A stretch of 64,000 bases of DNA from Takakia lepidozioides (GCA_030704615.1 CM060731.1:54126001-54190000); one strand, 5' to 3'; shown: positions 13,101 through 64,000, numbered from the stretch's first letter. The notes: a model not told the origin generated them from the sequence alone. Made by a program: numbers and translations.

Positions 13101-13130
13101 GCGTGCCATGCGTATTATACGCGCTTCCAT
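10107..13130 (-). CDS. Gene B: intronless PLS-class PPR-DYW organellar C-to-U RNA editing factor (1007 aa) with N-terminal degenerate PDF motifs; ends GYW
   Basis: Single ORF: transit-peptide-like N-terminus, about 1.5 PDF-like motifs, 17 PPR motifs (L-S, 4x P-L-S, P2-L2-S2), E1/E2, PG box, HHSEKLA...CGDCH...HHF..G.CSC. Confidence 0.93.
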   Translation of the reverse strand: MEARIIRMARMTSWGCPHEPLGCAACEIGTLRRTSEKCGLSGMYGFAAHFSSSLIPIELQRRPVEEDQAHGQPGGEQRGYTCKYSKSQNTDVEKLWSKCFSGPSRLWDYRGRKIHLREADFKHNEGLCIRKHEKPAWVVGDLDNQGRKISRKRPGFNYKSTNERLWIDDRCTRPACVDGRLNAAGAQLSQSGTLTMTTSSVRCGDVRELCKGGRLQKALQILKLGRIAADSKTYVCLLQECIKTKGLAEGRQVHAHIIQSGFRPDLFLYNNLVNMYAKCGSVVDARLVFDKMPERGLVAWNTMLAGYAKQGYCKGTLETYEQMIGEGLTPNQVTFICVLKACASLADLKKGRAIHADIMRSGIVPNIMLDTTLVDMYAKCGSINDARGVFKNMAERNVVSWGAMITGYAQQGCGMEALETYDHMMREGLKPNQVTLASVCKACASLGALEKGKEVHADIMKAGIVPNIILDTALVDMYCKCESINDAKGVFDNMAERDVVSWGAMIAGYAQHGCGREALETYEQMMWEGVKPDQVTFVSICNACACLGALEKGKAVHADIMKAGIVPNIILGTTLVDMYAKCGSIEDAKGVFSNMAERNVVSWNAMIAGYAQHQWGMEALETYEQMMREGIKPDQATFVCVCNVCASLAALEKGKEVHADITKAGIAPDIILNNNLLDMYAKCGSIANAKGVFDSMAERNVVSWSVMIAGYAQHGCRTEALQLFEGMQKEGLKPNSITFLCILSACSHGGLVNEGRHFFDAMSQDHGLTPTVEHFGCVVDLLGRAGRFHEAEDFINKMPIKPDAVVWKALLGACRVYGNVAVAERAAKSILKSAQQDAGTYVLLSNIYAAAGRWDDSAKVRRMMNVRGVRKEPGCSCIEVGNRVHSFVVDDKLHPQIEEIHATLRDLSEQMKEAGYVPDTRFVLHDVEEEQKEFSLCHHSEKLAIALGLISTTPGTPLLVIKNLRVCGDCHTATKFISKIVGRAIVVRDANRFHHFQAGVCSCGGYW

Positions 13131-17300: not shown

Positions 17301-20300
17301 GGCTGAACGAAATGTGGTATCCTGGAGTGCTATGATTGCAGGATATGCGCAGCATGGGTTTGGGGTGGAGGCTTTGGAGACCTATGAGCAAATGATCCGG
17401 GAAGGGGTGAAGCCCAACCACATCACATTTGTTTGTGTTTGCAGTGCGTGTGCGAGCCTGGCAGTCCTTGAAAAGGGCAAAGAGGTCCATGGTGACATGA
17501 TCAAAGCTGGAATTGTACCAGATGTCATTCTGAACACTGCCCTTGTGGACATGTATGTCAAATGTGGCAGCATCGAGGATGCAAAGGGAGTGTTTGACAA
17601 TATGGCTTATCGAGATGTGGTGTCGTGGAACATAATGATCACAGGATATGTGCAGCATGAGTGTGGGATGGAGGCTTTGGAGACCTATGAGCAAATGATG
17701 TTGGAAGGGGTAAAGCCGGACCAGGTCACGTTTGTATGTGTTTGCAATGCCTGTGCAAGCCTGGCAATGCTGGAAAAGGGCAAAGAGGTCCATGGTGACA
17801 TCATCAAAGCTGGAATTGTACCAGATGTCACTCTGAACAATAAGCTGGTGGACATGTATGCAAAAGGTGGGAGCATCGGAGATGCAATCGGAGTGTTCAA
17901 CAATATGGTGGAACGGGATGTGGTGTCGTGGAACACGATGATTGCAGGATATGCACAGCATGGGTGGGGGATGGAGGCTTTGGAGACCTATGAGCAAATG
18001 ATGCAGGAAGGGGTGAAACCGGACCACATCACATTTGTTTGCGTTTGCAGTGTGTGTGCAAGCTTGGCTGCCCTGGAAAAGGGCAAAGAGGTCCGTGGTG
18101 ACATGATCAAAGCTGGAATTGTTCCAGATGTCATTCTGAACACTGCCCTTGTGGACATGTATGCCAAATGTGGCAGTATTAAGAGTGCAAAGGGAGTGTT
18201 TGACACTATGGCAGAACGAGATGTGGTGACGTGGAACGCGATGATCGCAGGATATGCACAGCATAGGTGTGGGATGGAGGCCTTGGAGACCTATGAGCAA
18301 ATGATGTGGGAAGGGGTGAAGCCAGACCGGGTCACGTTCATTTGCATTTGCAATGTGTGTACGAGCCTTGCAGCACTGGAAAAGAGCAAAGAGGTCCATG
18401 GTGACATGATGAAAGCTGGAATTGTACCAGATGTCATTCTGAACACTGCTCTCGTGGACATGTATGCCAAATGCGGGAGCATTGAAGATGCAAAGGGAGT
18501 GTTCAACAATATGTCGAAACGTAATGTGATGTCATGGAACGCTATGATTGCAGGATATGCGCAGCATGGGTGCAGGATGGAGGTTTTGAAGACCTATGAG
18601 CAGATGATGCGAGAAGGGGTGAAACCAGACCAGGTCACTTTTGTTTGTGTTTGCAAAGTGTGTGCAAGCTTGGCAGCCCTGGAAACAGGCAAAGAGATCC
18701 ATGGTGACATCATCCAAGCTGGAATCGTTCCAGATGTCATTCTGAACACTTCTCTTGTGGACATGTATGCCAAATGCGGGAGCATCGAGGATGCAAAGGG
18801 AGTGTTCGACTATATGGCTGAACGAGATGTGGTGTCCTGGAATGGAATGATTGCAGGATATGCCCAGCATGGGTGTGGGATGGAGGCTTTGGAGATCTAT
18901 GAGCAAATGATGCAGGAAGGGGTGAAGCCGGACAGGGTAACATTTGTTTGCATTTGCAATGCGTGTGCAAGCCTGGGAGCACTGGAAAAGAGCAAAGAGG
19001 TCCATGGTGACATGATCAAAGCTGGGATTATACCAGATGTCATTCTGAACAATGCCCTCGTGGACATGTATGCGAAAGGCGGAAGTATTGAAGATGCAAG
19101 GGGAGTGTTTGACAAGATGGCTGAACGAAATGTGGTGTCCTGGAGTGCTATGATTGCAGGATATGCGCAGCATGGGCGTGGGATGGAGGCTTTGGAAACC
19201 TATGAGCAAATGATGCGGGAAGGGGTGAAGCCCAACCACATCACATTTGTTTGCGTTTGCAATGCGTGTGCGAACCTGGCAGCACTGGAAAAGAGCAAAG
19301 AGGTCCATGGTGACATGATCAAAGCTGGAATTATACCAGATGTCATTCTGAACACTGCCCTCGTGGACATGTATGCCAAATGCGGCAGCATCGAGGATGC
19401 AAAGGGAGTATTTGACAATATGGCAGAACGAGATGTGGTGTCATGGAACACGATGATTGCAGGATATGCCCAGCATGGTTGTGATATGGAGGCCCTGCAA
19501 CTATTGGAAAAAATGCAAAAGGAAGGCTTGAAGCTGGACAGTATCACTTTTATATGTGTTCTCTCTGCATGTAGCCATGCTGGCCTAGTGGATGAAGGCA
19601 GACATTACTTCGACTCTCTGAGTCAAGATCATGACATCACTCCAGCAGTGGAGCACTATGGCTGCATGGTGGACCTTCTTGGCCGTGCGGGGCGATTGGA
19701 TGAGGCAGAGGACTTCATTAACAAAATGCCAATGAAACCAAATGCTGCAGTGTGGAGGGCCTTGCTTGGTGCCTGCAAAATTCATTGCAATGTGGAGATG
19801 GCTGAACGTGCGGCAACATCTATTCTCAAGTGGGATGAACAGGACGCCACAACTTATGTGTTGCTATCAAACATCTATGCCGCAGCTAGCAGGTGGGACG
19901 ATACTGCAAAGGTGAGAAAATTGATGGAGGTCAGAGGGGTTAGAAAGCAGCCAGGCCACTGCTGCATTGAGGTCGGCGACAGGGTGCACACCTTCGTTGT
20001 GGATGACAAATTGCATCCTAAAATTGAGGAAATCCTTGCTAAGCTGAGAAGATTATCTGGGCAGATGAAGGAGGCAGGTTATGTGCCTGACACACGTTTT
20101 GTACTGCATGATGTGGACAAGGAGCAAAAGGAATGCTCTCTTGGCCACCACAGTGAGAAGTTGGCTATTGCTTTTGGGCTGATCAGCACGGCCCCTGGGA
20201 CGACTCTCCGAATCATCAAGAATCTTCGGGTGTGTGGTGACTGCCACACCGCCACCAAGTTCATCTCAAAGATTGTTGGGCGAGCAATTGTTGTACGGGA

Positions 20301-20358
20301 TGCTAACCGCTTTCACCACTTCGAAGATGGCGTTTGTTCTTGTGGGGATTACTGGTGA
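14305..20358 (+). CDS. Gene C: 7-exon PPR-DYW editing factor (~1590-1620 aa) with three N-terminal PDF motifs and ~32 PPR motifs
   Basis: Phase-consistent exons 14305-14425, 14610-14689, 14958-15087 (or -15162), 15375-15454, 15625-15757, 15898-15992, 16222-20358. The last exon is the 1381-aa ORF (9 P-L-S triplets, P2-L2-S2, E, DYW ending CSCGDYW). The 5' exon boundaries are inferred. Confidence 0.85.
16730..19480 (+). repeat. Tandem 303-bp (101-codon) P-L-S repeat array in gene C
   Basis: Near-identical units recur every 303 nt (e.g. ggagacctatgagcaaatgatg; aaagctggaattgtaccagatgtcattctgaac). Confidence 0.9.
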
Positions 20359-41392: not shown

Positions 41393-44300
41393 CTATCCGC
41401 CAGTCTTCGGCAGTTTGTACTGCTTTTTGAGAAATTTGGAGGCATCACGCTCTGACCGGTGGCACAGAATACGAAGGAGAGTGTCGGCATCTGTAGCAAT
41501 CCGGGAAGACCCTGCTCTCTGGACACTTCCACCGCCTACCATCTGCTCACTTGCTCGCTTGAAATTATCTATAAGTACGGGTGTCTGCAAACAACAATAC
41601 CACCTCCTCTCCTTACTATTTTTGTGAGTTCTTTCACAAGAGATTGTTTGACATTTAGCATGCTCTCTTCCCTGCTTGGACCTGAGTGACGGAATGGAGA
41701 AACTTTCTGAATGACCAATGCCAGACAAAAGACCATTCTGGCGCAATCAATAACATCATCCACTGGTATAGACATGATTCCAATAAAACACAAAGCAATC
41801 CCAACACTGCTACTGTGCCCCATACTTTAGTCACAGATGTGACACTGCAAGTCAAATTTGTGGCTGGAAAAGTCTGACAAGAATGCGGGCAACAGTAGCC
41901 ACATTGCACATTGGGGGTGATAGCCCCACATGCACTTAAGACAACAAGAAAAAATAAGAGAGAAAGGAAGGAATTATCCACTGGAAGCTCAAGGCTCTTG
42001 TACCCCATGAAAAGTTCAAAAAGATCTGCAAAACAGAACCTCCACAATACTAAAACTCAGTGAAACTTCGAGAGAGAGAATGTACTCTTAAGAACTTGGT
42101 AGAAAGAGTGAGAGAGCACTCACATCAAGGGTGTACAGATTCAGTATCTCTTGGACATGGGCAGCAGCATTGTCCACCATCCCTGTGGGGAGGCCCTCCC
42201 CTTCTGCTGTGAAGAAATCCTGCCCAAACCAATTCCCCAATGCCTAAGTATAAAAGACATAATATCCTAGGTCTAGCCTGAGCACATTGGAGTCACATGT
42301 CCTAAGCATAACACGCCCTGACCTGTAGCCCCACTGGGAAGTACGCTGTAATAAATACTCTGGAGATGCTCTGTAGTTCACAACTCTTCAACCTGCTGAT
42401 AAACTTCCCAGACATGGAAAAGGGGAGCGAGAGTGCAAGATACAAGGTGGTTTCTTAGTGGGGCCTCCCTTCGGGGCTTTCCTTGGCTTGAAAGCCTTGG
42501 GATTGTCTTCCACCTTGTTTCAAAAAATCCAAATCAGGGTGTTGCCACTTTCACCTCCCCTCAAGAAAAACAGATGCAGAGGAAGAACAAGGAACCTTGA
42601 GCACATTGAGGTCTTCTTCCAGCATCTCGGAATCAGTCTGTGCAAAGGCTCTCGTTGGCCCTCCATCTAAAAGCACATGCAGTAGCCCATCCTTACAACA
42701 AGCCAACCATTGTTTTGTTAATACTCCAAACGAAACTAGAACTAGAACTAGAACTAGTATAGCCTCCTAAACAATCTGTGTCTTTCATACCAATTAGCTG
42801 AATGATTTTTTTCCTCAAGACCAAGCTCAGAACACTCAGAGAACAAACCAAAGTTATGTGGCTGTATATCACTGCCTGCTTCCTGACAGATTGTTCTGCA
42901 CCCTATAGACTCACAAAGCACAAGCCCACACCAAAGCCAGGGTCTAGAATTTGCTATATGACATTTGCAAGCTCCTACTGTGAGACTCAAATGTCAACTT
43001 CAAAGCAGGCATTCCATGGTGTGAAGAAGAAAGAGCATCCTCCAGGGATTCCTCCAACTACTCCCAAATCATCTACAAAAAGTCCTCAGGCTGCTCCCTG
43101 CGAACGTTGGCTTGCCATAGCCTTACGGCCATTGACCTAAAGAGCATCCTCCAGGGATTCCGTCAACTACTCTCAAAGCATCTAGAAAAGGTCATTATGC
43201 TGTTCCCTGCGAATGTTGGCTTGCCATAGCCTTACAGCCATTGACCCCAGGCAGCTAACCCTCCCGGAGCCTTTTGTGGGTTCGTGCCAACCAGGGTTTA
43301 GTTTATCCCCCAGGCTTCAGCTGCACATATAAAATTATTTTACCGCAACTGCAATTAAGGCCCTCACAGAGGCACTTGTCCGCATGCAAACTCGACAGCC
43401 CGCTTGCAGAGTTATTGATTTGAATTTTATAGCATCTAGAGAACAGGTTGGAAATTTGGGACACCGTTTACTAGCAAAGAGGATCAGACCCAGCATACAC
43501 ACCAGGGAGGCTTGCAAAAGTCCGAGTACAACACGGTCCCGAAGAGGCTCCACAATTACTTCACATAGTTGCCCCAAGACCTGTATGAACCCGCATCAAT
43601 GCAACTAGAGGAAAATGAGTAAACATGAACGGAAAAATAGTCAAAAAGTCACAGATGCTCATTTGAGAGTAAAGGGAAATTGTCTATACTTACCGGGTCA
43701 AGCACACTGATCACAATTTCCATGCGTGCTTGAGCCACACTCACTTTGTACAAGCCTTCAAGAAAGGTGTCTCTTATGTCCCAGAATATTATTTTTGTGC
43801 CTGCCCGTAAGTCACATTCATGTAATTAGTAGGTTCACTCAAAAACCCAAAGGACACACATCAAAGCCAACACCCCAAAGACAAGCACTCCGATCACAAC
43901 CAAACAAGCTTTTTGTACATAGATAGGATGACACCTGTAAATCTCAACACCCTAAACTTGCAAGCACAGTTTCCCCAAAACTGCCTATGTAACATCGACA
44001 AGACATGCTGCACATGTCAGTCACCAAATGTAACCACGGGCCCAAATGCAGAATTCATCAAATGACATTCTCACCTGTAAATTCGCAAATCTTGTCAATG
44101 GCAATATTTACCACCTTTCTTGACCCCTCCAGCGAAAGGTCATCCATTGGCCTTATCCCAGACATCCGCTTTGATCTCAAGTCTCCATCACCTGAACCTG
44201 ACCTGTGTCCTGTACCCAACAGTGAGTAATAATCTCCAATGAGGAGTATGTTGGAAAACCACTGGCGTGTGGTCGGGCTAGGGATTGAACCTAGGACCTC

Positions 44301-47300
44301 CCCCATTCCGGTGGGGTGCTCTACCACTGAGCTACCCATCCCGTTCTGTTCTCCAAGTGCCGTGCAAGGGCTATAACCTTGACACTCCAACACTCCCCCT
44401 CAAGGCATAGCCCTTATAGCTAATGCCCACCCATTCTGACCACCGCCCCAACCTTGGCTCTGATACCATGTTGGAAAACCACTGGCATGTGGTCGGGCTA
44501 GGGATTGAACCTAGGACCTCCCCCATTCCGGTGGGGTGCTCTACCACTGAGCTACCCGTCCCGTTCTGTTCTCAGTGCCGTGCAAGGGCTATAACCTTGA
44601 CACTCCAACAGAGTAGAACTCCCAAGACATTATAGTCCTATGACATTGACACTCACGTCCAGGGAACCCAATGAACCTTACTTGAACCTTCCACAAAACA
44701 AGCTACCAGCTACAACAGGATAAAACCAATTGAGCGTTGTTTAGCTTACACACTTGAAATAGACCCATTAGTGTAGCTGAGATCATCCTGTGGTCTTTTT
44801 ACAGCCCACCGCTCACGGATGTTGTCTTCCACTAGATCCACCTGCCTCAATATGTACTGCAGCCTCTTCCCCAAGCCACGGTCACACCTTTTCCCAACCC
44901 CAGCACACTAGTGCCTCTTCGATCTGTTGGTCACTACAATAACCCCTGCCCCCTTCCTGCCTGTTCTAACCCTCCATTCCTGTCCGTTGGAAAATTTTAT
45001 CATAAATGGTAGCTCTTGTGAGCAACATTTACACTTCCAATAGTCTGTTCTGAGACTTTTGAATGTGGGAATTGATGTGTGAGTCCTTTCCAATAATAAA
45101 TCCCTAAAAAATGCAGATGTGAGGGTACATCAGATTTATTATGGACTGAAATGTGCCATTCATGTTGCACAAAGCTACAGTTTCAAGAATCCAACCCAGT
45201 TGGAGAACTAGCTCATAAACTTGCGCAAATTGACTGGTGGTCGAGTCATGACAAGTTGATCAAATGTACCATTCTCAATCCATACTTCATTTCACCAGGT
45301 GGAAAGTTTCAGACAAATGATTTGATAACCCCAAGCCACCAGATGAGTTTGTATGAGGGAGAATGTAGTTCACTTACATGAAGTGTGTTAAGGCGGACAC
45401 AGAGCTTGGCAGTAGTGAGAATATTTATCTCGCTCGATCGTTTATCATCTGGGAGGCGAGGGTCAACAGCTTTCTTCTTGCTTTGTGCCTTCAAGGCAAC
45501 GTCTTTCTTGTAGCGGGTCAAACCAGGAGGGGGAGGAATGAGGTCTGCTTTATCACCTGCACAGAAGCAAACCATTTTGTAATGAGATGAGAAGCTAAGC
45601 TTATGGGTGCCTAAGTACTTGATATTCCTAAGATGAAAAAGTGTTGAAGGAAACGGCTCACCTAATTGAGTTGCAACTTTGTTCGCATACGACTGCAGTG
45701 CATTATCAAAGCCATTGGTGAGGCCTTTAAGCAGTGGTAATCTCATTGGAAGCTTCAGGTTGAAAAACTGATCTATGGTCTGGCCACCCACCCCAACCAG
45801 ACATCAAGAACTAAGTTGGTCTTGTGGAAGCTGCTCTGCAGGCACTGAGACACATTCCCAGCAATAATATCCTAGAAAGCATTGAGAAGTGGATCAGTGG
45901 CTATCCACACCCAAAACTGTTACACTTGAAGACAAGGTTTTAATGACCTTTGCACAGTTCAGTTCCATTAATGCATTGCAAGGGAAACCACGAGCTCACT
46001 CTCTCTTAAAGAGACGTTATAAAGCATGTATGTGGACGTTATAAAGCACCATTTCATTTCTCTTGGGTTAGCTTGACACCACCTTCCAAGACCAAAAAAA
46101 CCCTTCACTGGATAGTGCTCACTCCTCTTTAAGGGTTTACTCACCAACAAAACAACTGACATCAACTGTCCCTCATTCAAGCCTTGTTGGCTTAGGACTA
46201 CAGACCACTAAGCCACTAAGGTACTAGTGAATGCAAGGGAAGCACACCTAGACTGCTTCAAAACCTCCTGGGGTTCACAAATGACACAAGCACAATTCAG
46301 TTCCATAGTTAGAAACTGCTTCTGTTTTGGGTTGCATAGATCTACTATAATTCATCTGTGTGCAGTCTCTGATAGCTTCCAAGTTCAGGAACTTCAGATA
46401 AGCAGAATTCGAAGGACCTCTTCAATGATTCGGAAAACCTCCACAATTGATTCTCCATGTTGTTGCTGCGTTGAGAGGGGCTCCCATCTCTTCACATGAA
46501 CCACGTATCATTGTCACCACATGTCACTGTCACAGAAATTAGGGACGTGGGAATCTCACCCTTTGGATGAGTCCTTAAAACTCCAAACTGATAGTTATCT
46601 GATGTCTCTTCGAAAATACAGTTCGACTAAAGTCACTAACATATCCAACTGCCTGTGCAACCCAAAATTCTTGCAAGGTGAAGACACGTATACCTACTCC
46701 TGATTAAAACATGGAAGCAATGGTGTGATCACCGCAAACACCAGTTTCTGGAAGACAGACCACATGTACACATATGACTGCTTGATGAGAGTCAAGTAAT
46801 GAAGGAGAGGAGTGCCTACTTCTTGTTCAACTGTGCGTTCCACCCATTCTGACACCCGCGTTAGTTGCGCATTGACCCATCTCATAATCAATGTTCCTGA
46901 CACAAATTCCACCTGCCTCAACTCCATGAATGTGTGTCAGAGTGTACTACGGAACTCAAGAATCACATTAGAAACGCAGCTGACTAAAGGAGCTTGGTGT
47001 TGACCTTATGAGGGTCACTTGCTGAGATTCGTGTTGGGAGCTGATGAAGTCACTGTATAATTGTAGCTTATGACTGATACTCACTGATGAGTTTTGGTTA
47101 GCCAGAAATGATTTGAGAGTTTATGGTGCAATACACTTGATTGAGTCCATTTTTGGATGTGTACTTTGGTGTGGCTGATGGAGACTGCAGCTTGTTTATT
47201 TGCTTCTCGGGTAAGCGTGGTTAGGAGGTTACAGATGGGTCTGGGTGCAGGGGGGTCTGGGTGCAGGGGGGTATGGTATGGGGTGTATAAACCAGAAAGG

Positions 47301-50300
47301 GTGGGTGTGGGCGATGTGGATAGGGTCATCATTGGGTACAACTATGGGGTGGCCATGAACATGGGCACATGTTTATGTATACTGTTACAGATCCTGTTTG
47401 ATCAAAATGAGTCTCTCACCTGATAAGGCACCATTCGCTGCTCAAACACACGCCTGCCTTCATCATCATCAGTAACAGATGCGACAAGCTCCATCAAGAA
47501 CTGCTCTAAGAAATCAGCTGCCGGCAATACCAATGCCACGTCGTTTGTAAGGTGTGAAACTCCATCCAAAAAAGGTTTCTGGATTCAACAGAAAGCCAAT
47601 AAGCAACAGTGTTTGGTTGAATGCTGAGACTCTGCTTTGTAAGGAGAGTTTTTCAAAGCTGTGGAGTAGAATGGGGCATAAAAGAAGACCAAGGAGGAAG
47701 CTCACAAGGATAATGGACGCTACTAATGTTCTATAAAGCCATAAAATATTGAAATAGCCGGAACTGGAGGTTATTAATTTCGCAACCGGAACCGTAGGTT
47801 ATAAAATGAAATGGTGCTTTATAACGTCTGTGGAAAGCTCATAGAGCTTATGGGACAAAATGGAAAGAAAAACATGAGAGAAAACAGGAAACCAGACTCA
47901 AAGATAAGAATTATTGTTCGAGTGATTGTCTAAGGGTGAATGCCTCGTGCAGGTAGGCTGCCAAGCATTTCTGATCCTCATAGTGAAAGACCTCAGTGAG
48001 AGATTGGGTTCCACGGAATAGACAATGGAATCTCCCACGGATCTCATAGTATAGAGGGCAATAGAAGAAATCAAATAACTGCTCAACGCTGGAAAAATCC
48101 TTAAGAGAAAGAAATGAGATGAAATGGCACTTTATAACGTCTGCAGGAAGCTCAAAGAGCTTATGGGACAAGAGGAAATGAAATGAAATGAAATGAAACA
48201 AGAAAGAGAGAGAGGCCACAAGCAGCCCAAGAGCAACTATTGCTCAAGCGGTTGTCTAAGAGGTAACACGTCATGCAGGTAAGCTGCCAAGCATTTGTAA
48301 TCCTCATAATGGAAGGCCTTCGTGAGAGATAAATGAAATGAAATGAAATGGTACTTTATAAAGTCCACGGAGAGATTGTACTCATAAGACATTGTTTGCC
48401 GTAGCCTTGTGGCCATTGACCCCGCGCCCACTTTGAACGGAACATAAAGGGACAGAAACTACCTTTGTCAGGGGCTGACGCCGGTAGTATGATTTACCTT
48501 GGAATAAACAGTTGATCCGAGATTTCCATATATCCTCCAGAAACCCCTTCACACAATCCGCAATCTGATGTGTGTGATTTGCCCAATAGCTAGACCCCAG
48601 AAGGGCCTGGGCTTTTGGCTCAGCCTCAAGATTTTCAAAGTTGTTAAACAGAGGTACAGGCACAATTTCCTTGATGGAATGGAAGAGGGTGTCCCGTTGG
48701 TGAGAGTACCCAGGACAATGAATCAGGAAGTGAATATTGTCTTCAGGTTGCCCACACAACGGGCACTTACAATCAACTGTTTGTTGTTCAACAGTAGGCT
48801 ACCTGTTGGAGTGTCAAGGTTATAGCCCTTGCACGGCACTTTGAGAACAGAACGGGACGGGTAGCTCAGTGGTAGAGCACCCCACTGGAATGGGGGAGGT
48901 CCTAGGTTCAATCCCTAGCCCGACCACACACCAGTGGTTTTCCAACATGGTATCAGAGCCAAGGTTGGGGCGGTGGTCAGAATGGGTGGGCATTAGCTAT
49001 AAGGGCTATGCCTTGAGGGGGAGTGTTGGAGTGTCAAGGTTATAGCCCTTGCACGGCACTTTGAGAACAGAACGGGACGGGTAGCTCAGTGGTAGAGCAC
49101 CCCACCGGAATGGGGGAGGTCCTAGGTTCAATCCCTAGGCCGACCACACGCCAGTGGTTTTCCAACACTACCCGCCCTGAGTTTGAATTTCAGTCTAGTG
49201 CCGAGGGTGGGTAGACCCTTGAGGTCATCCATGATGGCCTCACCCATGTCACAGACTGGAAACAGGTTGAGGGAAGTTTTCTGCCTAACTTCATTTTCTT
49301 CAGACAATTTCCTGGCAATAGACCTGGCTTCGGAAACTTCAGCTTCTAAGCCAGATTTATCCAGCAGGGTCATGGCTAGTGGACTAAGATTCAAATCCTT
49401 GAAAATCTCTTCTACCCTTTTCCGCCAGGATTTAGCCTGTTTGACAGGGCGGTCCTGCTTCCAAGATATAGAGTCGATTAACTTAGGATATCTGGTATTA
49501 GCCATACGTTGCAGCTGACCCCACCATCTGATTTTGAATTCATCGCGTCGGGAGCTTAAGGGAGGAATGCCAAACCCACCCCGAACAGCCACATTAGCTG
49601 TTTTGGAGCATGCTGACATGCACTCCTTGAGCACCCCGACTTGGATGGATTCAAGAGACTTAGCCTGGTTGGAGTTATCAATCCATTCAGCAGATGCATA
49701 CTCCAAGGCCGGCCTGATAACGCGGCAAAGCATGGTTTTTTTGACTTCAGAGTTGATCCCTCTGCAGTGGAAAAATTTAGTGAGACCCAGCGCTTTGCGT
49801 TTGCCAGATTGAACCACTCTTTGAATATGTGCTTCCCAATTACAGTTGGAGGAAAACTCAACACCAAGATAGGTGTAGGAGGGGAGAACAGGGATCTCTT
49901 GGCTTCCCCATTGCCACTTGAGATCGCCTCCTCCTTCCCCCCGGTCGTTGAATGCCACCACTGTGCATTTACTGACATTGGCCTCTAGCCCCCAAAGATC
50001 AAAGTATCTCTTCGCGCAATCTATCAGCCCCTGGAGGTTGGAAGGAGTCTCCCCTATGCCTGCGAAGTCATCCGCAAACATAAGGGCTGGTATGGTGGGG
50101 AGAGGGTACATCCTTGAGCTACACCTTGGTCTATGTCAAAGAAATTAGACTTCTGTCCATTTACAGTGACACAGCTTTTAGTGTGAGCATACAAGTTATG
50201 GACCACTCTCCACATCTTTCCCTTGATCCCGGAAGACCAGAGTCGGAGCCATAGACCGTCTCTCCACACTGTCATAGGCCTTTTTGACATCCAAGAAAAA

Positions 50301-53300
50301 GACAAAAGTAGGTTTCCCTTCTTTTTTCCTTCCCTGGATAATCTGGCTGAGTTATGATCCACGCAGCCCCTGTTTCGCCGAAAGCCAGCTTGGCCTTCAT
50401 GGAAACAACCTCTGGACTTCAGATCAACCTCGAGACGAGTACTTATAACTCTGCAGAATATCTTGCCAACTGCATTAAGAAGCGTGATGCCCCGATAGTT
50501 ACCCGGCTCTTCTCTGTCACCTTTCTTATATAAATTGACGTCCACGGAGAGAAAAGGAGGCACACCAATATGTCAAGGGGAGGTCCAGAGGACCTACAAG
50601 AAAAAGAATGTACTCATAAGACGTTGTTTGCCATAGCGTTGTGGCCATTGACACTGTGCCCAGTTTGAGCGGAACACAAAGGGACCGAACCTACTTTGTC
50701 AGGGGCTGATGCCGGTAGTAAGACTTACCTTGGAATAAACAATTGATCCGGGTTTTCCAGATATCCTCTAGAAATCCCTTTACACAAGCATCAACCTGCT
50801 GTGTGTGGTTTGCCCAATAACTAGGCCCCAAAGGGCCTGGGCTTTTGGCTCAGCCTCGAGACTTTCAAAGTTGATAAACAGAGGTACAGGCACAATACCC
50901 TTGATAGATTTGAAAAGAGCGTCTCTCTGGTGAGAGAACCCCGGACAATGAATCAGAAAATGAATATTGTCTTCAGGTTGCCCACACAACGGGCAATTGC
51001 ACTCTCCCTTTCCTCTCTGCTTCTGTTTGCTGTTCAAAGGTAGGCTTCCCGCCCAGGGTGAAATTTCAGTCTAGTGCCAAGAGTGGGTAGACCCTTGAGG
51101 TCATCCATGATGTCCTCCCCGATGTCACAGACTGGAAACAAGTTCAGGGAAGTTTTCTGCCTAACTTCATTTTCATCGGACAATTTCCTGGCAACAGACA
51201 TGGCTTTGGACACTACAGCCTCTAAGTCAGATTTATCCAGCAGTTTATCCAGTAGTACAGGAAAAAGAGAAGGGTGAAAAAGTAGAGAGTCATTACAAGG
51301 AATAGTTACCAGCTCTTTCTGGTACAGAGAGTGCAAGAGACATGCAGTGATAGCAACCGCCTGTGGATGCCATCTTGAGAGAATGGGTGCAAAGAGACTT
51401 GCATCCCTCTGAGCCAGCATCTGCACTTCCTCTGCAAGAAGAGCCAATGGGTGCTCATGGTTGGCTTTTGATTTTGACTCCACTTCCTTAAGGGTCTGCC
51501 AAACCATCCAATTGAATTTTAGAATGTCATTCAATTTTGAGCAAGGAGCTTTATCAGGTTAATTGCATCCTGTGGTCTTTCAAGTTGTCAGCAAAGAAAA
51601 TATGTAAAAACTACAGATTCTGCTCTTAAGGCCTTGACCTTATTATGGATCGTCTGTCGGTCACTTCATGGTATGCCACTTCTCGAGTTATGGCTTGTCT
51701 GTTGGCCACTTCTAGATACCGCATCAGACATGACAGCCAACTTGAGATGTTCAAGGATCTTTTACCCTTTTGTATGCCGACTTGATTGAAGGCCAGATGT
51801 AGTACTCTGCCTGCTTAGCCACAGCTGCCATCTTTTTGTGACCTGCACAGAAGTTATCAAGAATGTCATTGTTGTGACATAACAAAGGTCCAATCAAACT
51901 CAGCTAGGTCATGCAATAGTCCTTCACACAAAAATACCGAGAACATTTCTTTGAGAACCTGGCACACTCTACTTATATACCTTTAGCCTTTGACCTTGAC
52001 TTGAAAATCTGAACCATGGTGAACTTCCTCTAAATCAACCTGGTTCAGAGGCAGGACACTTCACTTTCCCAACCACTGCCCAAAGACTAATCATCACATC
52101 TCAAGCTTATCAGACAAACATCCTTTTTAGATCATGCCACCGCCAATGTTTTAAGGCCTAGGTCCACAAGTCTCTCACTGCATCTTACAAACATTTGTAC
52201 CATACCCCAGATTGCTCATTCTCATCTGCTATAAGCCTGCCCGAGATCATCGCAACTGTTGTCAAAACTTCCATCTTGCTGGGAGCCTGATATCAAAGCA
52301 TTCAAGCAAGTGTGAATGAGCCAATGTCCACCTCAATTGAAGCAGCTTTCAGTTATGTCAACCACTTCCATCATGGGTATGTGATAAGAGACACATTGCC
52401 TCTTGGAATATACACAAGGCTAGCCAGTTCTATGTACAAAGGCAAGAACCAAGCCCTGCCTTCAGAGTTACATACTATCTGGTTGTACTGGAATTATCTA
52501 GTATAGCCCAATAAACTGGTTGGACTAAGATTTTCAGTCATGAATGCTGGGTTTTCCTTGCACTGAATCTTCAAGGGCTCTCGCTTCAATATTCAGACAT
52601 GTGTGCATGGCCCATTTTTTTCTGGAAGATTGGAGTGATCCCCAGCTCGACAGAGAGCATCATCATTGTAGCATCAAGTAGGCAGGTCTGGAAGACACTA
52701 TAGGCTGCCATGGAATCACACTGTTGATTGCCATAAGAATTTATCTCGCTGAGTGATAAACATCAGGCCTGTTAAGCATGCAAAAGGGACTGAGCACTGC
52801 ACAAAGGTCAAGAAGGATTAAGGCGTGCTGAAGGAAGTGTGCAAGATTGTTTAAACCTCAGCCAACCTGTTCAGCCACAAACAAAGGAGGAACCCAATGA
52901 GGTTCGCTGTACTATATGTCGGGCAATCCCTATTATACCAAACAGACTCTTCTCCGTCCAGAAACAAAAGAAAGAAAGGTCTAATGATTACATTCTCTCT
53001 CTGATGCTTACACATACATCTGCAAAATGCAAATGGTAGTCTCCAAGTTGCTTGTCAGCCCATTGCTTAACAGGCATAAGCACCGATTGTACATAAGAAA
53101 GCTCCTGGGGTTCTTCAGCACCTTCCATTGTGGACCTTAACCCCCTCATGTAGAATCTCTCTTGTATACCTCGTTGGCTGTCAGACACAATTCTCTTGAT
53201 TTGTTGCGTGGCATGTTGTAGCAGAGCTGACTCCCCTGTCAACACATACTGCAACCAGAACAAATCAGCATCACAGTGAAGGAAGGAACGTCTAATGTCC

Positions 53301-56300
53301 ACTGGGGCCCCTGAGGAGCTTGGGACAAAGTAGGGTAACAAGCAAACTACAGCAAAGGACTCCAAACGCTGCTCCGAGACAAATTGTATCATACAGGTAA
53401 GCTCCCTCGTTGTTTAAAAGAAAGTCACACCCATGGATACTGAAGGCTTTGTCTAAGAGGGGGAGAAGAATTCTTATGTCTGTGGGAGGCTGAAGGAGCC
53501 AGGGATAGAATGTACTCATAGGATGTTGTTTGCCGTAGCCTTCTGGCCATTGACCCCAGAGGGGAAGAAGAATTCTTATGTCTGTGGGAGGCTGAAGGGA
53601 TAGACTGTACTCATAGGATGTTGTTTGCCATAGCCTTCTGGCCATTGACCCCATGCTCAGTTTGAGCGGAACAGAAAGGGAAGGAGCCAGGCATAGAGTA
53701 TCAATTTAAGTACAGAGGAGCATCCAGGCTTACATGTTAATGGAAAACAATTGATAGGGCATAATGAGAAAATATAACAACAGAGTAGAAATGCAGAAAA
53801 CAGACACTAATGAAACCCCAAACTCGTGACCTCAAAATACTTATGGGTCTAGGAGTGTGTGACAAACCAAGACACAATACCCAATAGGACTAAGGGTTTT
53901 CATGTGTTTTGAAAAGGGGTCAATTGTATAGCTATTGAAATCTCACTTGCTATTTGGAGTTTACCTGACGAAAGAGAACCCAAGCATAACAAGTGTCATG
54001 CACAGTCTGTGTGATTCCTAAGACCCGCCATGTTGACTTTAAGAGCTCTAAAATCTCTTCAACCTCCTGCATCAAAACACATGTGAAATCCACACGTGGT
54101 CGAGCCATCTTCAACATGCTTCATAATTCTTATACCAGTTTAAGCATCCAAATGTACAGAGCTCTCCCTGGGTCTGTAACAAGGAAGCCAACTGACATGC
54201 TCCTGAAAGTCACCTGTCAAAATGTCTTTATAGCATATGACAGTCTGAAAAAAGCAGCCAAAGATCATGGGGACCCACTGATGAGACAACCAAGGCTGGC
54301 AGACAGATGTGGAACTCTAACTACCAGCCTACTTAGGATGTAAGAACCAGAATTGCACTCTCTACAATTTAGATAGCTACTGGGGAGTACTCCACAAGAG
54401 GTGGACACTGCAGAAACACCACTTAACCAGATGTGCATGCATGGAGCTTGTGTATGTCAGAGAGTCCTAGCAACAAGCAGAACGAAAGGGGTTGAGTCAA
54501 GTACCTCCACAAGCTGGCCTTCATCCAGAACATCAAATACACTCAGGAGCAGGTTTTCATACAGGTGCACATTGAGATGGTAGCCATCTGCCCAATGGCA
54601 GACCTCACCTGACTGGTCACCCCTCCCAGCCCTTTCGGCCAAGGCAAGAGTCACCCCTCTCATGGGTTTTAAGCTCTCTGCGTGCTGGGCAGGACCTGCA
54701 GGAGAGGGAAGAGTCTGCAACATGTTGCCCACATTTCCATGTTCAGATCAAAGGCAGTACAATCTATCACACTGTATAGTGTCACCCACTCGGCCCGAGG
54801 GTCCCCCAATGGAGATTATTAAGTTTCTAGGTTATTAAGTTATTAAGTACCATTTCATTTCTAACTGGTTTCATTTCTTTCTTTTCATCTCTTTTCATCT
54901 TTATTACAAGGAAATGAATGAAATGGTACTTTATAAAAGAAACAATCATACTTCGTAAAACAAACGCCTCAATCACAACTTTGGCAAGCCAAAGTTTGGC
55001 CCTTTCAGCCTCCCTGTATGGAGTATCTTTCTTTATAAAGTTCCTTCTTTTCCTTTCCTTTCTCTAGTTCCACTGTGTCGCATAAGCTCTTTGAGCTTTC
55101 CATGGACATGATAAAGTATGAGAGTTCTGGGCACCTAGTGTCCCAGTTTCCTGGTGGGAAAAAATTTGGAATTGCTGCAAATGTCTTCTAGGAATGGTTG
55201 GGAGCTAGAGCTCACAAATTCTATGAGCGGAATCTGCAGGCATACCACTTAATACTGAAGCCATCTTCAGGCTTACAATCTTTCTTACAAGGTTACCAGA
55301 CCTTCCACCCAAAGGGCTGAGAAAAGTCGGAAACTTTAACATGGCTTTAACATGGCTTTTGACACAAACCCCTCCAAGTCAGGTTCATCCAGTAATGTCA
55401 ATTCTTCTGGACTATTATTCAAATACATAACAATCTGTTCTACCCTTTTCCGCGACTTAGCCTGTTTAACAGGAGGGTCTTGCTTCCAAGAAATAGAGTC
55501 GATTATCTTAGGGTATCTAGTATTGGACATGCGACTTAACTGACCCCAACCATCTAACCTTGAATTCGTCTTGTCAAGAGCTTAAGAGAGGTATGCCAAA
55601 CTGGCCCTGAACAGCCACATTAGCTGTTCTTGAGCACCTGAATGGATTCTAGAGACTTACCATGGTTGGTATTGACGACCCACAGAGCAGACGCATACTA
55701 TGGTCCTCTTAACTTCAGTATACACCCTCTGCAGTGGAAAAATGACTTCTTGTACATGCAGTAGAGCTGGAGGACAACTCAATACCACAATATGCATAGG
55801 AAGGGAGTACATGGATCTCTTCATTACCTCATTACTCCACTTGAGATCCCCTCCTCCCTCCCCACGGTTGTGGAATGCCACCACTGCGCACTTACGAACA
55901 TTAACTTCTAGGTCCAACAGGTCAAAGAACCTCTTTGAACAGTAAATCAACTCCTGGAGATTGGATGGGGTATCCCCTGCCTGCGAAGTCATCCGCAAAT
56001 ATAAGAGCCGGTATGGTGGCTCAACCACCTTTAACCCAAACCCCTCACTTTCCACTTCTTCAAGAAGCTGATTGATGAAACATTGAAGAGCAGTGGGGAG
56101 AGGGTACAGCCTCGTGCTACACTTTCATCTATATCAAAGAAGTTAGACTTCTGGCCATTGCCCGTAACACAGCTTTTGGTGTTCACATACAGGTCGTGAA
56201 CCATCCTCCACATCATTTCCCTGACCCTAGAAGACCAAAGCCGAGCCACAGCCCATCACACCGTACTGTGTCTTTTGACATCCATGAAGAGGACAAAAGT

Positions 56301-59300
56301 GGGCTTTCCTTCTTTTCACCTTCCGTGGTTAGGGTGCAGATATGGTCAGTGGAGCCCCTATCTCACCGAAGCCAGCCTGGCCTTCATGAAAACCACCTCT
56401 AGACCCCAGATCAACCTCGAGACGGGTGCTTACTATCCTACAAAATAGCTTGCCAACAGCGCTAAGGAGAGTGATGCCACGATAGTTCCCAGGCTTACCT
56501 TTCTTCAACAGATTGACAATGATTCCTTCCTGAAAGGGAATCAATTCGGTCTGCCAAATAAGGTTAAAGAGACGGGCAAGAGCCTCTACCATAGGGTCAC
56601 CACCACACGTGATTAGCTCATTGACAATGCCATCAGGTCCATCTCTAGCCACTTGGATGTTTTACAGCTTCCACAACATAATGAGTGTGTTGAATTGTAT
56701 TCCTTTGAGATAGTCTGCAGATAGAGACTTGTAGGTGGGACAGCCTACAGAGCGAGGACCACCTGTCCCCTGCTTGCGCCAGGGATACCAGGAGGGAAAC
56801 CGAAAGTGGATAACATCTGTCCTTTCTACTATGAGATATGCGGGAGATGCTATTGTCTATTCTGAGGTAGCCAATCTCTCAAAGAGGTGTTCCATTATGA
56901 GGATCAGAAGTGCTTAGCAGCATATCTGAATGTGTTGACCCTTAGACAATCCCTTGATCAATAGTTATTTTCAGGCTGTTTGTGGAGGCCCCACACTATT
57001 TCTTGAATCTCTCTTCCACGGACGTTATAAAGCACCATTTCATTTCATTTCTCTTCCTCTTGTCCCATAAGCTTCCCATGGACATTATAAAGTACCATTT
57101 CATTTCTCTTTCTTTTGAGCTTCCCATTTTTTGGCAGAGGCGTTCAGCTTTGAAGAGCCAAACTGCCAACAGCCTACCTGCTTCAGGTGACACTTGACGT
57201 ATTCTGAAGTAGTTCTTGATGGGTTCTACCTTGTCCCATGCACCCTCATGACCATTTGTGGACGTTACTAAGTTCTTTGAGACGTTGTAAGGGTCCAATT
57301 TTTCTTTCTTATCCCCCCAAGGACGTCAGTCCTACTAGAACCACCAATTGGCATCAGGGCAATTTATTCACCACATTACATGCATGTCAGATCAGGGGAG
57401 AACTCTGCGCCTATATTTGAAAGCTAACTAATTGAAGGAAAGAATAGAGGACGTTATAAAGGTCCTATTTTTCTTTCTTAGCCCCCCAAGGACATCAGTC
57501 CTACTTGTTGGAGGTGTCAAGGCTATAGCCCTTGCACGGCACTCTGAGAACAGAGGTAGAGCACCCCACCGGAATGGGGGAGGTCCTAGGTTCAATCCCT
57601 AGCCCGACCACACGCCAGTGGTTTTCCAACACTACTCATCAATTGGCATCAGGGCAAAGAGCATCATAATGCCTTATCATTTATGTCAGACCAGGGGAGA
57701 ACTCTAGGCCTATATTTGAAAGCTAACTGCTTGAACGAAAGGATAGACCGTATCCAAGACAACAGCTAGTGCGGCATGCTTTCCAACCTCTCCGTTAAGT
57801 TCTCCACATCCCTGACAAGGGTGCACAGCTTCTGAGTCAGTTGCCAGATAGTAAAGCTAACATGAGATAAAGGAAAGAGGCTGGTGGCTGTTTAGGTCTG
57901 CTTTGTCCTTGGCAGAGGCCTTCAGCTGTGATCATCTACAGCTAACCTGCATGGCGCACCAAACTGAGCGACCTTAAGGGTTGTATGCATAGCCTTTGGA
58001 CATCCCATGGATGCAGTAAACTTGTTGCTTCTTCTGTCTTTTGTACTTCATACTACAGGGACACGAGGGTAAAAATGTCTTCTAGTCTTCCTTCTGTCTC
58101 CATCTTTGCATCGAATGCATCCACATTTACCGCGGCACGCCAAGCATGGTTCTCAACCTCCCTTACATGACCATCTACAATATAGGTTCAAATTGAGTCA
58201 ACAAAAAAACCTGAAACAGGGTGAATACCTCGGCTTCTTCAATTTTGGCAATCAGACCACGGAGTGCAGCTGCCATGCGATCCGAATGTTCAAGCCCAAG
58301 AGCAGGATGAACAAATAGCCCTTCAATCAGAAGATTGATCTGTGAACAGACCCAGACATCTTGTCACCATCATCAACTACACAAGTAAACCGAATTTTAA
58401 TGAACCAATTGTTGAGCCACTTGACACGATCCCGGCACGTACAAGTCAAGTACGATGATATTTGGGCTGGCTACAGGACAGGACCATTGCCTATACCAGC
58501 ATGTATTGTTCTATAGATTGCATGCACCAACTTGGAAATTGTCGAAAGTCTTGGTGAGGATGCAGAGAATATGGTCAACAAATAGTAAAACGTGACACTG
58601 AAATTCTTCATAGAACTGGAGCTTTGAGGTCCATGTCCATTCCTAAGATTCTGCCTTGATCAGTTAGTTCCTGTCCTGCCTTTCGAGGGATAATCCTTGG
58701 GTTATTCCCTTGGGACGGGCTAAAAGGTGCAAGAAAAGGTCTTTGGCCTGTGATAATTCTTTTCTTGGGTGGATATCTTATAAATACAAAACATATGGCG
58801 TTAAAAGAAATGAAACGAAAGAGATACATCATATGGCAAGAAATCTACCTAACTGACCCTCTATGATAGAGAAGAAAAAGAAAATGCATACCCGGCAGCA
58901 CCAACAGATGCAAGTAAAACTTCATAAGCTGTCTCACGGAGATCATCATCTGATAATCCTACAGAAACATGTAAACAAGAAAAAAACCTCAGATCGTTTG
59001 TTTGCATGTTGATGGCGTAAAACTGGCATGATAGCCTTAACCTTCAACTTAAAGAAGTAACATCTGACTTTGAGATGGATATCCACATGTGAGGCATCCT
59101 GCCATTCTAACATTTTAGAGGGCAGCAAGAGTTGGAGCCTTTAACTGCCACCATGCAACTCCTTGAGGGTTCAGAAGCTTCTGAAAAAGCTGTTCTGAGG
59201 ATGTTCTCAAAGACACTGTCATTTGCTTATGCCGCTTAAATCCATCCTAAGATCACCATGATTGGGTGTTGGACAGCTGGCAGATACCTTGCAGGTTCGA

Positions 59301-63299: not shown

Positions 63300-64000
63300 T
63301 GTGTGTCCTTAAGATGCTGGCTGAGACTGAAATTGAAGTGTGACGTGAGGGCTAAGGACCTCAGCGCAAATGTGAATGCCATTTGCTTGAAGAACTTGTC
63401 CCACTTCAAATCGTTTCCTTTGCTTAGCTAGCCCACAGAAGTTAAAGGTGGAGAGCCGCAGACCAGCTTCTTGCATACGAATTGTCTGACGTCTAGGTGG
63501 CTTTTCAATGCTCCTAGACATCCTGCAATTCTGCATTGGTGGGCCTGTTTCATTGCGTGTGGGCTTTGATCGTCGTTGTAGACTTTGAGGATTGGCATGG
63601 CATTGAGCATGCCATATCCTTCATTCACTAGTTGATCCATCCTTGCATGCGTAGGCATGTCTGACTCTTCTAGGGCAACCTCTTCCAGCGCTTCAAACAG
63701 ATTGGAAACTTTCAGTTTAAAGTCCCCATCTTTGACTGTCTTCCTCGAGTGCCTCATTGAGTCACCAATGTCTAGGATCACTCTCCAACCAGTCAAGAGT
63801 CGAACTTCTCTGAGATTAATTTGAAGTGAATCCCTACTTGCAGCATTCTTAGACATTGTCACCTTCAATGCACCTCTGATACCAAGTTTCCAGACGATGT
63901 CATCAGCCACAGGACTCTCAGCAAAGTTCCTCACCAAAGGCCATGTGGTCTTGTTAGGTGACTTCAATGCCCAGGTGGGCAAGGGTCTACAACAGGACCA
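63300..64000. mobile_element. LINE AP-endonuclease relics
   Basis: Minus strand LSTFNFCGLAK..IHICAE (endonuclease start); plus strand ~63938-63985 GHVVLLGDFNAQVGK. Confidence 0.55.

What the first reader, a model, noticed from the sequence alone, without database searches (positions are those of the whole stretch)
48804..49167. Cassandra-like TRIM retrotransposon carrying a complete tRNA cloverleaf in its LTRs
Seen: a 364-bp element with 144-bp LTRs (TGTTGGA..TCCAACA), a PBS complementary to the initiator tRNA-Met 3' end, a PPT, 5-bp TSDs and no coding capacity. There are two full copies (44249-44610, 48804-49167) and a solo LTR (57506-57631) within 14 kb. Each full LTR embeds, in the element's sense direction, a 72-nt tRNA-shaped unit: 6/7-bp acceptor stem (5/7 in one LTR), perfect D stem, perfect T stem, canonical A/B boxes, followed by TTTT near the LTR end. 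Established: Cassandra TRIMs carry a 5S rRNA-derived Pol III promoter in their LTRs. Inference: this family independently captured a tRNA type-2 Pol III promoter instead, making an LTR/SINE-like hybrid mobilised in trans by an iMet-primed (copia-like) partner. I do not know of a described tRNA-LTR TRIM, but cannot search.
Basis: partly seen in the sequence, partly recalled or inferred. Interest (0 to 1): 0.9.

Follow-up and report, generated by a model that had tools for sequence, protein, structure and literature searches.

The report
tRNA-carrying miniature retrotransposon (Helenus type)
This is a real, recently inserted 364-bp parasite of LTR retrotransposons whose two end repeats each contain a tRNA look-alike, but this kind of element was published in 2024 as "Helenus", so the copy adds a new family and probably a new host (a moss), not a new kind.

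Summary
There are two full 362/364-bp elements and one solo LTR. Each has its own 5-bp target duplication, and two have unfilled paralogous sites in the window. They carry 144-bp LTRs, an initiator-tRNA-Met primer site, a purine tract and no ORF. Every full LTR holds a 72-nt cloverleaf that scores 47-61 bits on Rfam tRNA (cut-off 29) but has no usable anticodon loop.

The novelty claim fails. Kojima 2024 (PMC10886601) described tRNA-carrying TRIMs as "Helenus", with one plant family, Helenus-1_SMo of Selaginella.

Our element resembles that family. The A/B-box blocks match at 45 of 48 positions. The last 10 nt of the LTR are the same, the primer site differs at one base and the purine tracts are near-identical. 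U3 and most of the internal region are unalignable, so it is a different family. The host is not Selaginella and is probably the moss Takakia.

This scan had already noted about 50 such elements in this genome, and two follow-ups reached the same Helenus verdict.

Two things may be new: a TTTT that would leave a 6-nt U5, and a hairpin presenting the purine tract, both shared with the Selaginella family. Pol III transcription and the autonomous partner remain unshown.

The parts
48799..48803 (+). Left target-site duplication of copy B (CTACC)
   Evidence: The paralogous unfilled site at 50950-51130 has a single CTTCC.
48804..48947 (+). 5' LTR of copy B, 144 bp, TGTTGGA...TCCAACA. Inferred layout: U3 48804-~48854, R ~48855-48941, U5 48942-47.
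   Evidence: The U3/R/U5 split is inferred from the position of the tRNA unit and the TTTT.
48855..48926 (+). tRNA-like cloverleaf in the 5' LTR. Box A is TAGCTCAGTGG from 48862; box B is GGTTCAATCCC at 48905-48915.
   Evidence: Rfam RF00005, 61.4 bits. ARAGORN calls tRNA-???. The MFE fold is a cloverleaf.
48938..48941 (+). TTTT, candidate (leaky) Pol III terminator, 6 nt before the LTR end
   Evidence: The same TTTTCCAACA end is present in Helenus-1_SMo.
48948..48960 (+). Primer-binding site TGGTATCAGAGCC. I read it from memory as complementary to the 3' end of plant initiator tRNA-Met; no tool checked the complementarity.
   Evidence: There are only two exact matches in the window, and both are in these elements.
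48948..49023 (+). Internal region, 76 nt, non-coding, identical in copies A and B
49001..49050 (+). Hairpin whose 17-nt loop holds the PPT G-run and the first 10 nt of the 3' LTR. The stem pairs the end of the internal region with U3.
   Evidence: -24.4 kcal/mol, z -2.8; 1 of 200 shuffles fold as well. Helenus-1_SMo has the same design with unrelated stem letters (z -7.1).
49015..49023 (+). Polypurine tract GAGGGGGAG
49024..49167 (+). 3' LTR of copy B, with the tRNA-like unit at 49075-49146 and TTTT at 49158-49161
49168..49172 (+). Right target-site duplication of copy B (CTACC)
44249..44610 (-). Copy A, 362 bp. TSD is GAGTA on the + strand at 44244-44248 and 44611-44615. tRNA-like units lie at 44270-44341 and 44490-44561.
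57506..57631 (+). Solo LTR, 126 bp, TSD CTACT (57501-57505 and 57632-57636). A 19-nt deletion removes box A.
   Evidence: The unfilled paralogous site is at 57281-57378.

Best explanation
These are young copies of a non-autonomous miniature LTR retrotransposon of the published Helenus type (TRIMp3). They belong to a family distinct from Helenus-1_SMo of Selaginella but resembling it.

Shown: the LTR-PBS-PPT-LTR structure, the 5-bp duplications, the unfilled sites and the tRNA-like unit with intact A and B boxes.

Inferred mechanism:
1. TFIIIC and Pol III use the internal A/B boxes of the 5' LTR and start at about 48855.
2. The polymerase reads through the weak TTTT of the 5' LTR and stops at the TTTT of the 3' LTR. 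This gives an RNA of roughly 307 nt.
3. Its ends repeat about 87 nt (R, essentially the tRNA look-alike). U3 is about 51 nt and U5 is only 6 nt.
4. Initiator tRNA-Met primes minus-strand DNA at the PBS. R mediates the first strand transfer.
5. The PPT, held in a hairpin loop, primes the plus strand.
6. Reverse transcriptase and integrase come from an unidentified autonomous element, probably Copia-like, which inserts the DNA with a 5-bp duplication.

The tRNA look-alike is not a working tRNA.
For: - Structure, TSDs and unfilled sites.
- tRNA likeness of 47-61 bits.
- No valid anticodon. The A.G and A.A mismatches are.
- The kind is described by Kojima 2024, with the same defining features and a plant member.
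- Comparison with Helenus-1_SMo: the two promoter blocks match at 45 of 48 positions, and the LTR end plus PBS match at 21 of 22.
- By hand alignment of the text, the 72-nt unit is 55/72 identical. The D arm, variable loop and T loop are 100% identical. Ten of the 17 differences lie in the anticodon arm. The other seven all lie in stems, including two compensatory pairs (5-67 G-C/A-T and 50-62 A-T/G-C).
- U3 is unalignable between the families, so constraint sits on the promoter and cloverleaf, on TTTTCCAACA, and on the PBS and PPT.
- TTTT occurs only once per LTR, 6 nt from its end. A related LTR in another organism also has TTTT 4 nt from its end, followed by TGGTAT (run X3).
- Copies A and B are 98% alike, and LTR pairs differ by 1.4-2.1%, so activity was recent.
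- About 50 notes on the same kind exist in this genome.
Against: - No transcript evidence. The only runs that hold the element are contigs of uncertain RNA or DNA origin, and contigs cannot show starts, ends or strand.
- A Pol III transcript meets the 5' LTR's TTTT about 84 nt after its start and before the PBS. Retrotransposition therefore needs read-through, which is assumed.
- Acceptor-stem and T-stem pairing is kept by compensatory change although the promoter does not need it. This hints at an RNA-level role that the promoter model does not explain.
- No autonomous partner was found.
- The features shared with Helenus-1_SMo could come from a common parent tRNA and generic Copia termini rather than common descent.
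Confidence: 0.6

Rival explanations
1. It is a Pol II-transcribed (or host read-through) TRIM. In this reading the tRNA look-alike acts as an RNA structure rather than a promoter, for example a tRNA mimic that helps packaging into the partner's particles, nuclear export or stability.
For: - The 5' LTR's TTTT would stop Pol III before the PBS.
- Acceptor and T stems are kept by compensatory changes between the two plant families (hand alignment), which a promoter does not require.
- Copy A lies 700 bp from an ORF with a PATROL1-like Pfam match (45309-45791) on the same strand, so it may sit in an intron of that gene and be co-transcribed.
Against: - The parts that are 100% conserved between families are exactly the A- and B-box arms. 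The anticodon arm, which tRNA-binding proteins often read, is free to vary.
- TTTT is kept just inside the LTR end in three related LTR types.
- Cassandra, the 5S analogue, is reported to be Pol III-transcribed (as summarised in PMC10886601).
Confidence: 0.25
2. The plant tRNA-LTR families arose separately. In this reading the family here and Helenus-1_SMo each formed when a similar tRNA-derived SINE or tRNA gene landed in the LTR of a Copia-type TRIM, so the resemblance is convergence and shared raw material. This rivals common descent, not the mechanism.
For: - Kojima argues for multiple births of Helenus.
- U3 and most of the internal region are unalignable.
- TGTT...AACA termini, the iMet PBS and a G-rich PPT are generic for plant Copia-type elements (from memory).
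- The promoter blocks also occur exactly in 60 unrelated microbial tRNA genes, 48 of them tRNA-Thr.
Against: - The spacing between blocks is the same 13 nt.
- The LTR end TTTTCCAACA is the same at 10 of 10 positions.
- Both have the PPT-in-a-hairpin-loop design.
- Both have lost a proper anticodon loop.
Confidence: 0.3
3. They are dispersed functional tRNA genes, or a one-off SINE insertion into one LTR, or a duplication or assembly artefact.
For: High Rfam tRNA scores.
Against: - ARAGORN finds no assignable anticodon.
- The anticodon stem has an A.G mismatch and the acceptor stem an A.A mismatch in all copies.
- All five LTRs carry the unit, as do the related LTR in another organism and the Selaginella family.
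- The three insertions have different TSDs, flanks and orientations, and two have unfilled sites.
Confidence: 0.02

Closest known systems
Helenus-1_SMo of Selaginella moellendorffii (Kojima 2024, Biology 13:119, PMC10886601)
   Same: - A TRIM with a 72-nt tRNA-like unit in each LTR and 5-bp TSDs.
- The LTR starts TGTT and ends TTTTCCAACA.
- The PBS is TGGTATC(A/G)GAGC, and the PPT ends GGGGGAG.
- The A/B-box blocks match at 45 of 48 positions with the same spacing.
- A hairpin encloses the PPT and the LTR start.
   Different: - The LTR is 144 bp against 120, the internal region 76 nt against 85, and the whole element 364 bp against 325.
- U3, the anticodon arm and most of the internal region are unalignable.
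- The host differs. The SMo-specific anticodon-arm pattern is absent from the window.
- Under the usual 80% rule, which I state from memory, this is a separate family.
Cassandra TRIMs (5S rRNA-derived Pol III promoter in the LTRs)
   Same: A miniature non-coding LTR element in plants with a small-RNA-gene-derived internal Pol III promoter and terminator in each LTR, and with no known autonomous partner.
   Different: The captured gene is a tRNA (type-2 promoter, A and B boxes), not 5S (type 1). No 5S match was found in the window. The element is about half the size of Cassandra (565-860 bp).
tRNA-derived SINEs (SINE2)
   Same: A tRNA-like head with A and B boxes, non-coding, and dependent on another element's reverse transcriptase.
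   Different: This element has LTRs, a PBS, a PPT and a fixed 5-bp TSD. It is therefore copied and integrated by LTR-retrotransposon machinery, not by target-primed reverse transcription from a LINE tail.

Membership tests
Helenus (TRIMp3; Kojima 2024) | TRIM architecture: two LTRs, short (published range 311-1263 bp), no coding capacity | tested here: met
   The elements are 362 and 364 bp with LTRs of 142-144 bp. No ORF of 60 aa or more lies inside.
Helenus (TRIMp3; Kojima 2024) | tRNA-derived sequence inside each LTR with box A (TRGCY...YGG) and box B (GGTTC) conserved | tested here: met
   RF00005 scores 47-61 bits in all four full LTRs. The boxes TAGCT..TGG and GGTTC are present.
Helenus (TRIMp3; Kojima 2024) | PBS directly after the 5' LTR and PPT directly before the 3' LTR | tested here: met
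   TGGTATCAGAGCC at 48948 and GAGGGGGAG at 49015-49023.
Helenus (TRIMp3; Kojima 2024) | 5-bp target-site duplication (plant and fungal members) | tested here: met
   The TSDs are CTACC, TACTC and CTACT. Two unfilled paralogous sites were found.
Helenus (TRIMp3; Kojima 2024) | Functional Pol III promoter. The paper proposes this but does not show it. | not testable with these tools
   Only contigs of uncertain RNA or DNA origin were available.
Helenus-1_SMo family itself | Sequence identity along the whole LTR and internal region (same family) | tested here: not met
   Only the promoter blocks, the LTR end, the PBS and the PPT match. The SMo anticodon-arm pattern has no match at 3 mismatches or fewer. 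U3 is unalignable by eye. A full tool alignment was left out because the consensus has no reference.
Cassandra | 5S rRNA-derived sequence in the LTR | tested here: not met
   Rfam scans of the whole window gave only tRNA matches and a sub-threshold plastid motif on the opposite strand.
Functional tRNA gene | Canonical 7-nt anticodon loop and an anticodon consistent with the body | tested here: not met
   ARAGORN gives tRNA-??? with a 2-nt '(gg)' anticodon. There is an A.G mismatch closing the anticodon stem and an A.A mismatch in the acceptor stem.

The most novel reading that the evidence does not exclude
The moss family here and the Selaginella family may be two branches of one ancient land-plant Helenus lineage, older than the bryophyte-tracheophyte split or moved between them. 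In that case the parts they share would be the working core of a Pol III-made retroelement RNA: the intact cloverleaf kept by compensatory changes, a TTTT that would leave a U5 of only 6 nt, and a hairpin that presents the polypurine tract in its loop. None of these three features turned up in a keyword search of the 2024 paper.
Probability: 0.3. Interest if true: 0.55.

Novelty: new member of a known kind. Interest (0 to 1): 0.3.

Why it matters
tRNA-carrying TRIMs inflate tRNA gene predictions. ARAGORN and Rfam call four 'tRNAs' in this window alone.

They also scatter potential Pol III promoters and TFIIIC sites through genes and repeats.

Only one plant family was on record, from Selaginella. 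A second, abundant and recently active family in a very distant plant, probably the moss Takakia, shows that the type is not a lycophyte oddity.

It also gives a second point of comparison. That comparison singles out what is constrained: the A/B boxes, the cloverleaf stems, the TTTT next to the LTR end, and a hairpin around the purine tract.

It is a useful system for asking how a Pol III transcript can serve as an LTR-retrotransposon genome. It is not a new class.

Tried and rejected
- **Metagenome scan for relatives, first pattern.** Box B, then the LTR end, then the PBS: 0 hits.
- **Metagenome scan, second pattern.** The two promoter blocks: 60 hits, all ordinary microbial tRNA genes (48 Thr, 10 Ile, 2 Met). 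There were no Helenus relatives. A tRNA-Thr-like parent is only a weak hint, because these are not plant tRNAs.
- **Expression.** The single search for sequencing runs returned five runs. Three hold part of the stretch, and all are contig sets of uncertain RNA or DNA origin. Laying them showed that the element is present, that a paralogous site lacks it, and that a roughly 92% similar LTR exists in another coded organism. Nothing could be learned about starts, ends or strand.
- **Autonomous partner.** There is no second exact iMet PBS and no other LTR pair in the window. The near-match at 63872-63884 is not preceded by an LTR end.
- **Rfam at E<=1.** Only sub-threshold 'Plastid-ycf2' matches on the opposite strand of the same units, taken as tRNA-shaped noise.
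- **Host identity.** The runs' organism names are coded. Best protein identities are about 50% to mosses (Sphagnum, Ceratodon) for an aminotransferase. For a PPR-DYW protein they are 53-57% to Diphasiastrum, with no Selaginella among the top 120. This excludes Selaginella but does not name the host. Takakia is an inference.
- I did not run a full tool alignment with the 120-nt and 85-nt Helenus-1_SMo consensus, because it has no reference. I aligned it by hand.
- **Within-window mutations.** These cannot test selection on the boxes, because the copies are dead ends. Only the between-family comparison is informative.

Full report
**Observation**

Copy B (48804-49167, + strand) has two 144-bp LTRs that differ at three positions. 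They start TGTTGGA and end TCCAACA. The 76-nt internal region begins with TGGTATCAGAGCC and ends with GAGGGGGAG. CTACC flanks the element on both sides.

Copy A (44249-44610, - strand) has an identical internal region, LTRs of 142 and 144 bp, and the duplication TACTC.

A solo LTR (57506-57631) is flanked by CTACT and has lost 19 nt, including box A.

The three insertions have different flanks and orientations, so they are independent events. For two of them the state before insertion survives in a paralogous repeat in the same window:
- 50950-51130 carries a single CTTCC where copy B sits.
- 57281-57378 carries a single CTACT where the solo LTR sits.

A contig from a public run also joins 48774 to 49168 without the element.

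Copy B sits in a dead LINE: RVT_1 fragments lie at 49128-50563 on the minus strand. Copy A lies 700 bp from an ORF with a PATROL1-like Pfam match, on the same strand.

**The tRNA look-alike**

All four full LTRs match the Rfam tRNA model end to end at 47-61 bits against a gathering score of 29. ARAGORN also calls them, but as tRNA-??? with no assignable anticodon.

The cloverleaf is the minimum-energy fold in two of the four units. All copies have an A.A mismatch in the acceptor stem and an A.G mismatch closing the anticodon stem.

They are therefore tRNA-derived and keep boxes A (TAGCTCAGTGG) and B (GGTTCAATCCC). They are not working tRNA genes.

The only run of four or more T in the element lies 6 nt before each LTR end.

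**It is a known kind**

A full-text search led to Kojima 2024 (PMC10886601). That paper defines Helenus as TRIMs with a tRNA-derived sequence in the LTRs and groups them with Cassandra and Ajax as TRIMp3. It reports them in fungi, animals and one plant, Selaginella moellendorffii. The plant family is Helenus-1_SMo, with a 120-bp LTR, an 85-nt internal region and a 5-bp TSD. Later papers in the library only cite it.

**Relation to Helenus-1_SMo**

Patterns taken from the published consensus hit our LTRs:
- The two promoter blocks, with the same 13-nt spacing, match at 45 of 48 positions.
- The LTR end plus PBS match at 21 of 22 positions.

I also aligned the text by hand. The 72-nt unit is 55/72 identical:
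- The D arm, variable loop and T loop are identical.
- Ten of the 17 differences fall in the 17-nt anticodon arm.
- The other seven are all stem positions. They include two compensatory pairs (5-67 G-C against A-T, and 50-62 A-T against G-C) and one change to a wobble pair.

Both LTRs start TGTT and end TTTTCCAACA. Both purine tracts end GGGGGAG.

By contrast, U3 and most of the internal region cannot be aligned, and the SMo anticodon-arm pattern is absent from the window. Ours is therefore a different family of the same type.

Common descent is not settled. It is favoured by the shared spacing, the shared LTR end and the shared hairpin design. Convergence is possible because the same kind of tRNA and generic Copia-type termini could give similar results. 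The promoter blocks occur exactly in 60 unrelated microbial tRNA genes, 48 of them tRNA-Thr.

**Two features that may be new**

A search of the 2024 paper for hairpin, terminator, TTTT and related words found nothing on either feature in Helenus. I did not read the whole paper, so I cannot rule out that they appear under other wording.

1. TTTT lies 6 nt from the LTR end in both plant families. A related LTR in another coded organism has it 4 nt from the end (run X3). On the Pol III model this would give U3 of about 51 nt, R of about 87 nt and U5 of 6 nt.
2. The end of the internal region pairs with U3 of the 3' LTR. This forms a 16-bp stem whose 17-nt loop is the G-run of the purine tract plus the first 10 nt of the LTR (-24.4 kcal/mol, z -2.8). 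Helenus-1_SMo forms the same design with unrelated stem letters (-30.6 kcal/mol, z -7.1). Two families are a thin basis, but a structure kept while its sequence is replaced suggests a function. The function could be presenting the plus-strand primer or acting as a packaging signal.

**Mechanism**

Shown: these are retrotransposed, non-coding LTR elements with an iMet-type primer site and a tRNA-derived unit under constraint at its promoter boxes.

Inferred:
- Pol III starts at the cloverleaf in the 5' LTR.
- It reads through that LTR's TTTT and stops at the 3' LTR's TTTT.
- The resulting RNA is copied and inserted by a partner's enzymes.

The weak point is the read-through. The first TTTT comes before the PBS.

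The conserved stems also suggest a role for the folded RNA that the promoter model alone does not need. The main rival is therefore a Pol II or read-through transcript in which the cloverleaf acts as an RNA structure.

My odds:
- about 0.95 that this is a Helenus-type TRIM;
- about 0.55-0.6 that Pol III makes its genomic RNA;
- about 0.25 for the rival.

No partner is in the window. 'Copia-like' rests on the termini, the PBS and the 5-bp TSD alone.

**Age and state**

LTR pairs differ by 1.4-2.1%, and copies A and B are about 98% alike, so the family was active recently. Four of the eight single-base substitutions private to one LTR are CpG transitions. This fits methylated, silenced copies.

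**Host**

An aminotransferase ORF is closest, at about 50% identity, to proteins of the mosses Sphagnum and Ceratodon. A PPR-DYW protein has no Selaginella hit among its top 120. The host is therefore not Selaginella.

The number of windows in the scan suggests a genome of about 325 Mb. One piece spans at least 45 Mb. The genome is also rich in PPR-DYW genes. From this I infer the moss Takakia. Several earlier follow-up notes say the same. This is an inference, not a tool result.

**Earlier notes of this scan**

About 50 notes describe the same kind of element elsewhere in this genome. Two follow-ups had already filed it under Helenus. One unchecked note reports a Copia fragment that shares a TSD with such a TRIM, which could be a lead to the partner.

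**Limits**

- There is no transcript evidence. The runs are contigs of uncertain RNA or DNA origin.
- No genome-wide set of copies was available.
- No tool alignment with the full published consensus was made, because it has no reference.

**Verdict**

This is a real feature and was read correctly. It is a new member, and probably a new host lineage, of a kind published in 2024. Interest is modest.

Noticed in passing
window 48996-49056 (and the equivalent in copy A, 44360-44420): A hairpin pairs the last part of the internal region with U3 of the 3' LTR, leaving the polypurine tract and the LTR start in the loop. Helenus-1_SMo has the same design with unrelated stem letters. A keyword search of the 2024 paper found no mention of it.
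   Followed up: partly
window 48799-48803, 44611-44615 (minus strand), 57501-57505: All three target-site duplications share a CTAC core in the element's orientation: GG-CTACC, TT-C|TACTC and TC-CTACT. This may be a target preference, but there are only three sites.
   Followed up: no
window 48886, 48930, 44286 (minus strand), 44338 (minus strand): Four of the eight single-base substitutions private to one LTR are CpG-to-TpG or CpG-to-CpA transitions. This fits cytosine methylation of the inserted copies.
   Followed up: no
window 47800-56500: A cluster of decayed LINE-like repeats: RVT_1 fragments at 49128-50563 on the minus strand, with paralogous blocks about 2.2 kb and 6 kb apart. In the laid runs these flanks reach word depths of thousands to about 93,000, against 40-530 for the TRIM. 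The LINE family therefore seems far more abundant than the TRIM, or more highly expressed.
   Followed up: partly
window 1-20400: Several long intronless PPR-DYW genes lie here: 10107-13130 on the minus strand (1007 aa), 16213-20358 on the plus strand (1381 aa), and fragments at 1982-4417. They contain 303-nt internal tandem units.
   Followed up: no
run X3 laid on window 48810-48931: Another coded organism holds a 159-nt contig about 92% like this LTR. It begins TGTTAGAA and ends ...CTTTTCACA followed by TGGTAT. This is a sister family whose TTTT lies 4 nt from the LTR end.
   Followed up: no
window 43030-43246 and 57281-57747: Short tandem repeats of 109 nt and about 169 nt. The solo LTR sits inside one unit of the 169-nt array.
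   Followed up: partly
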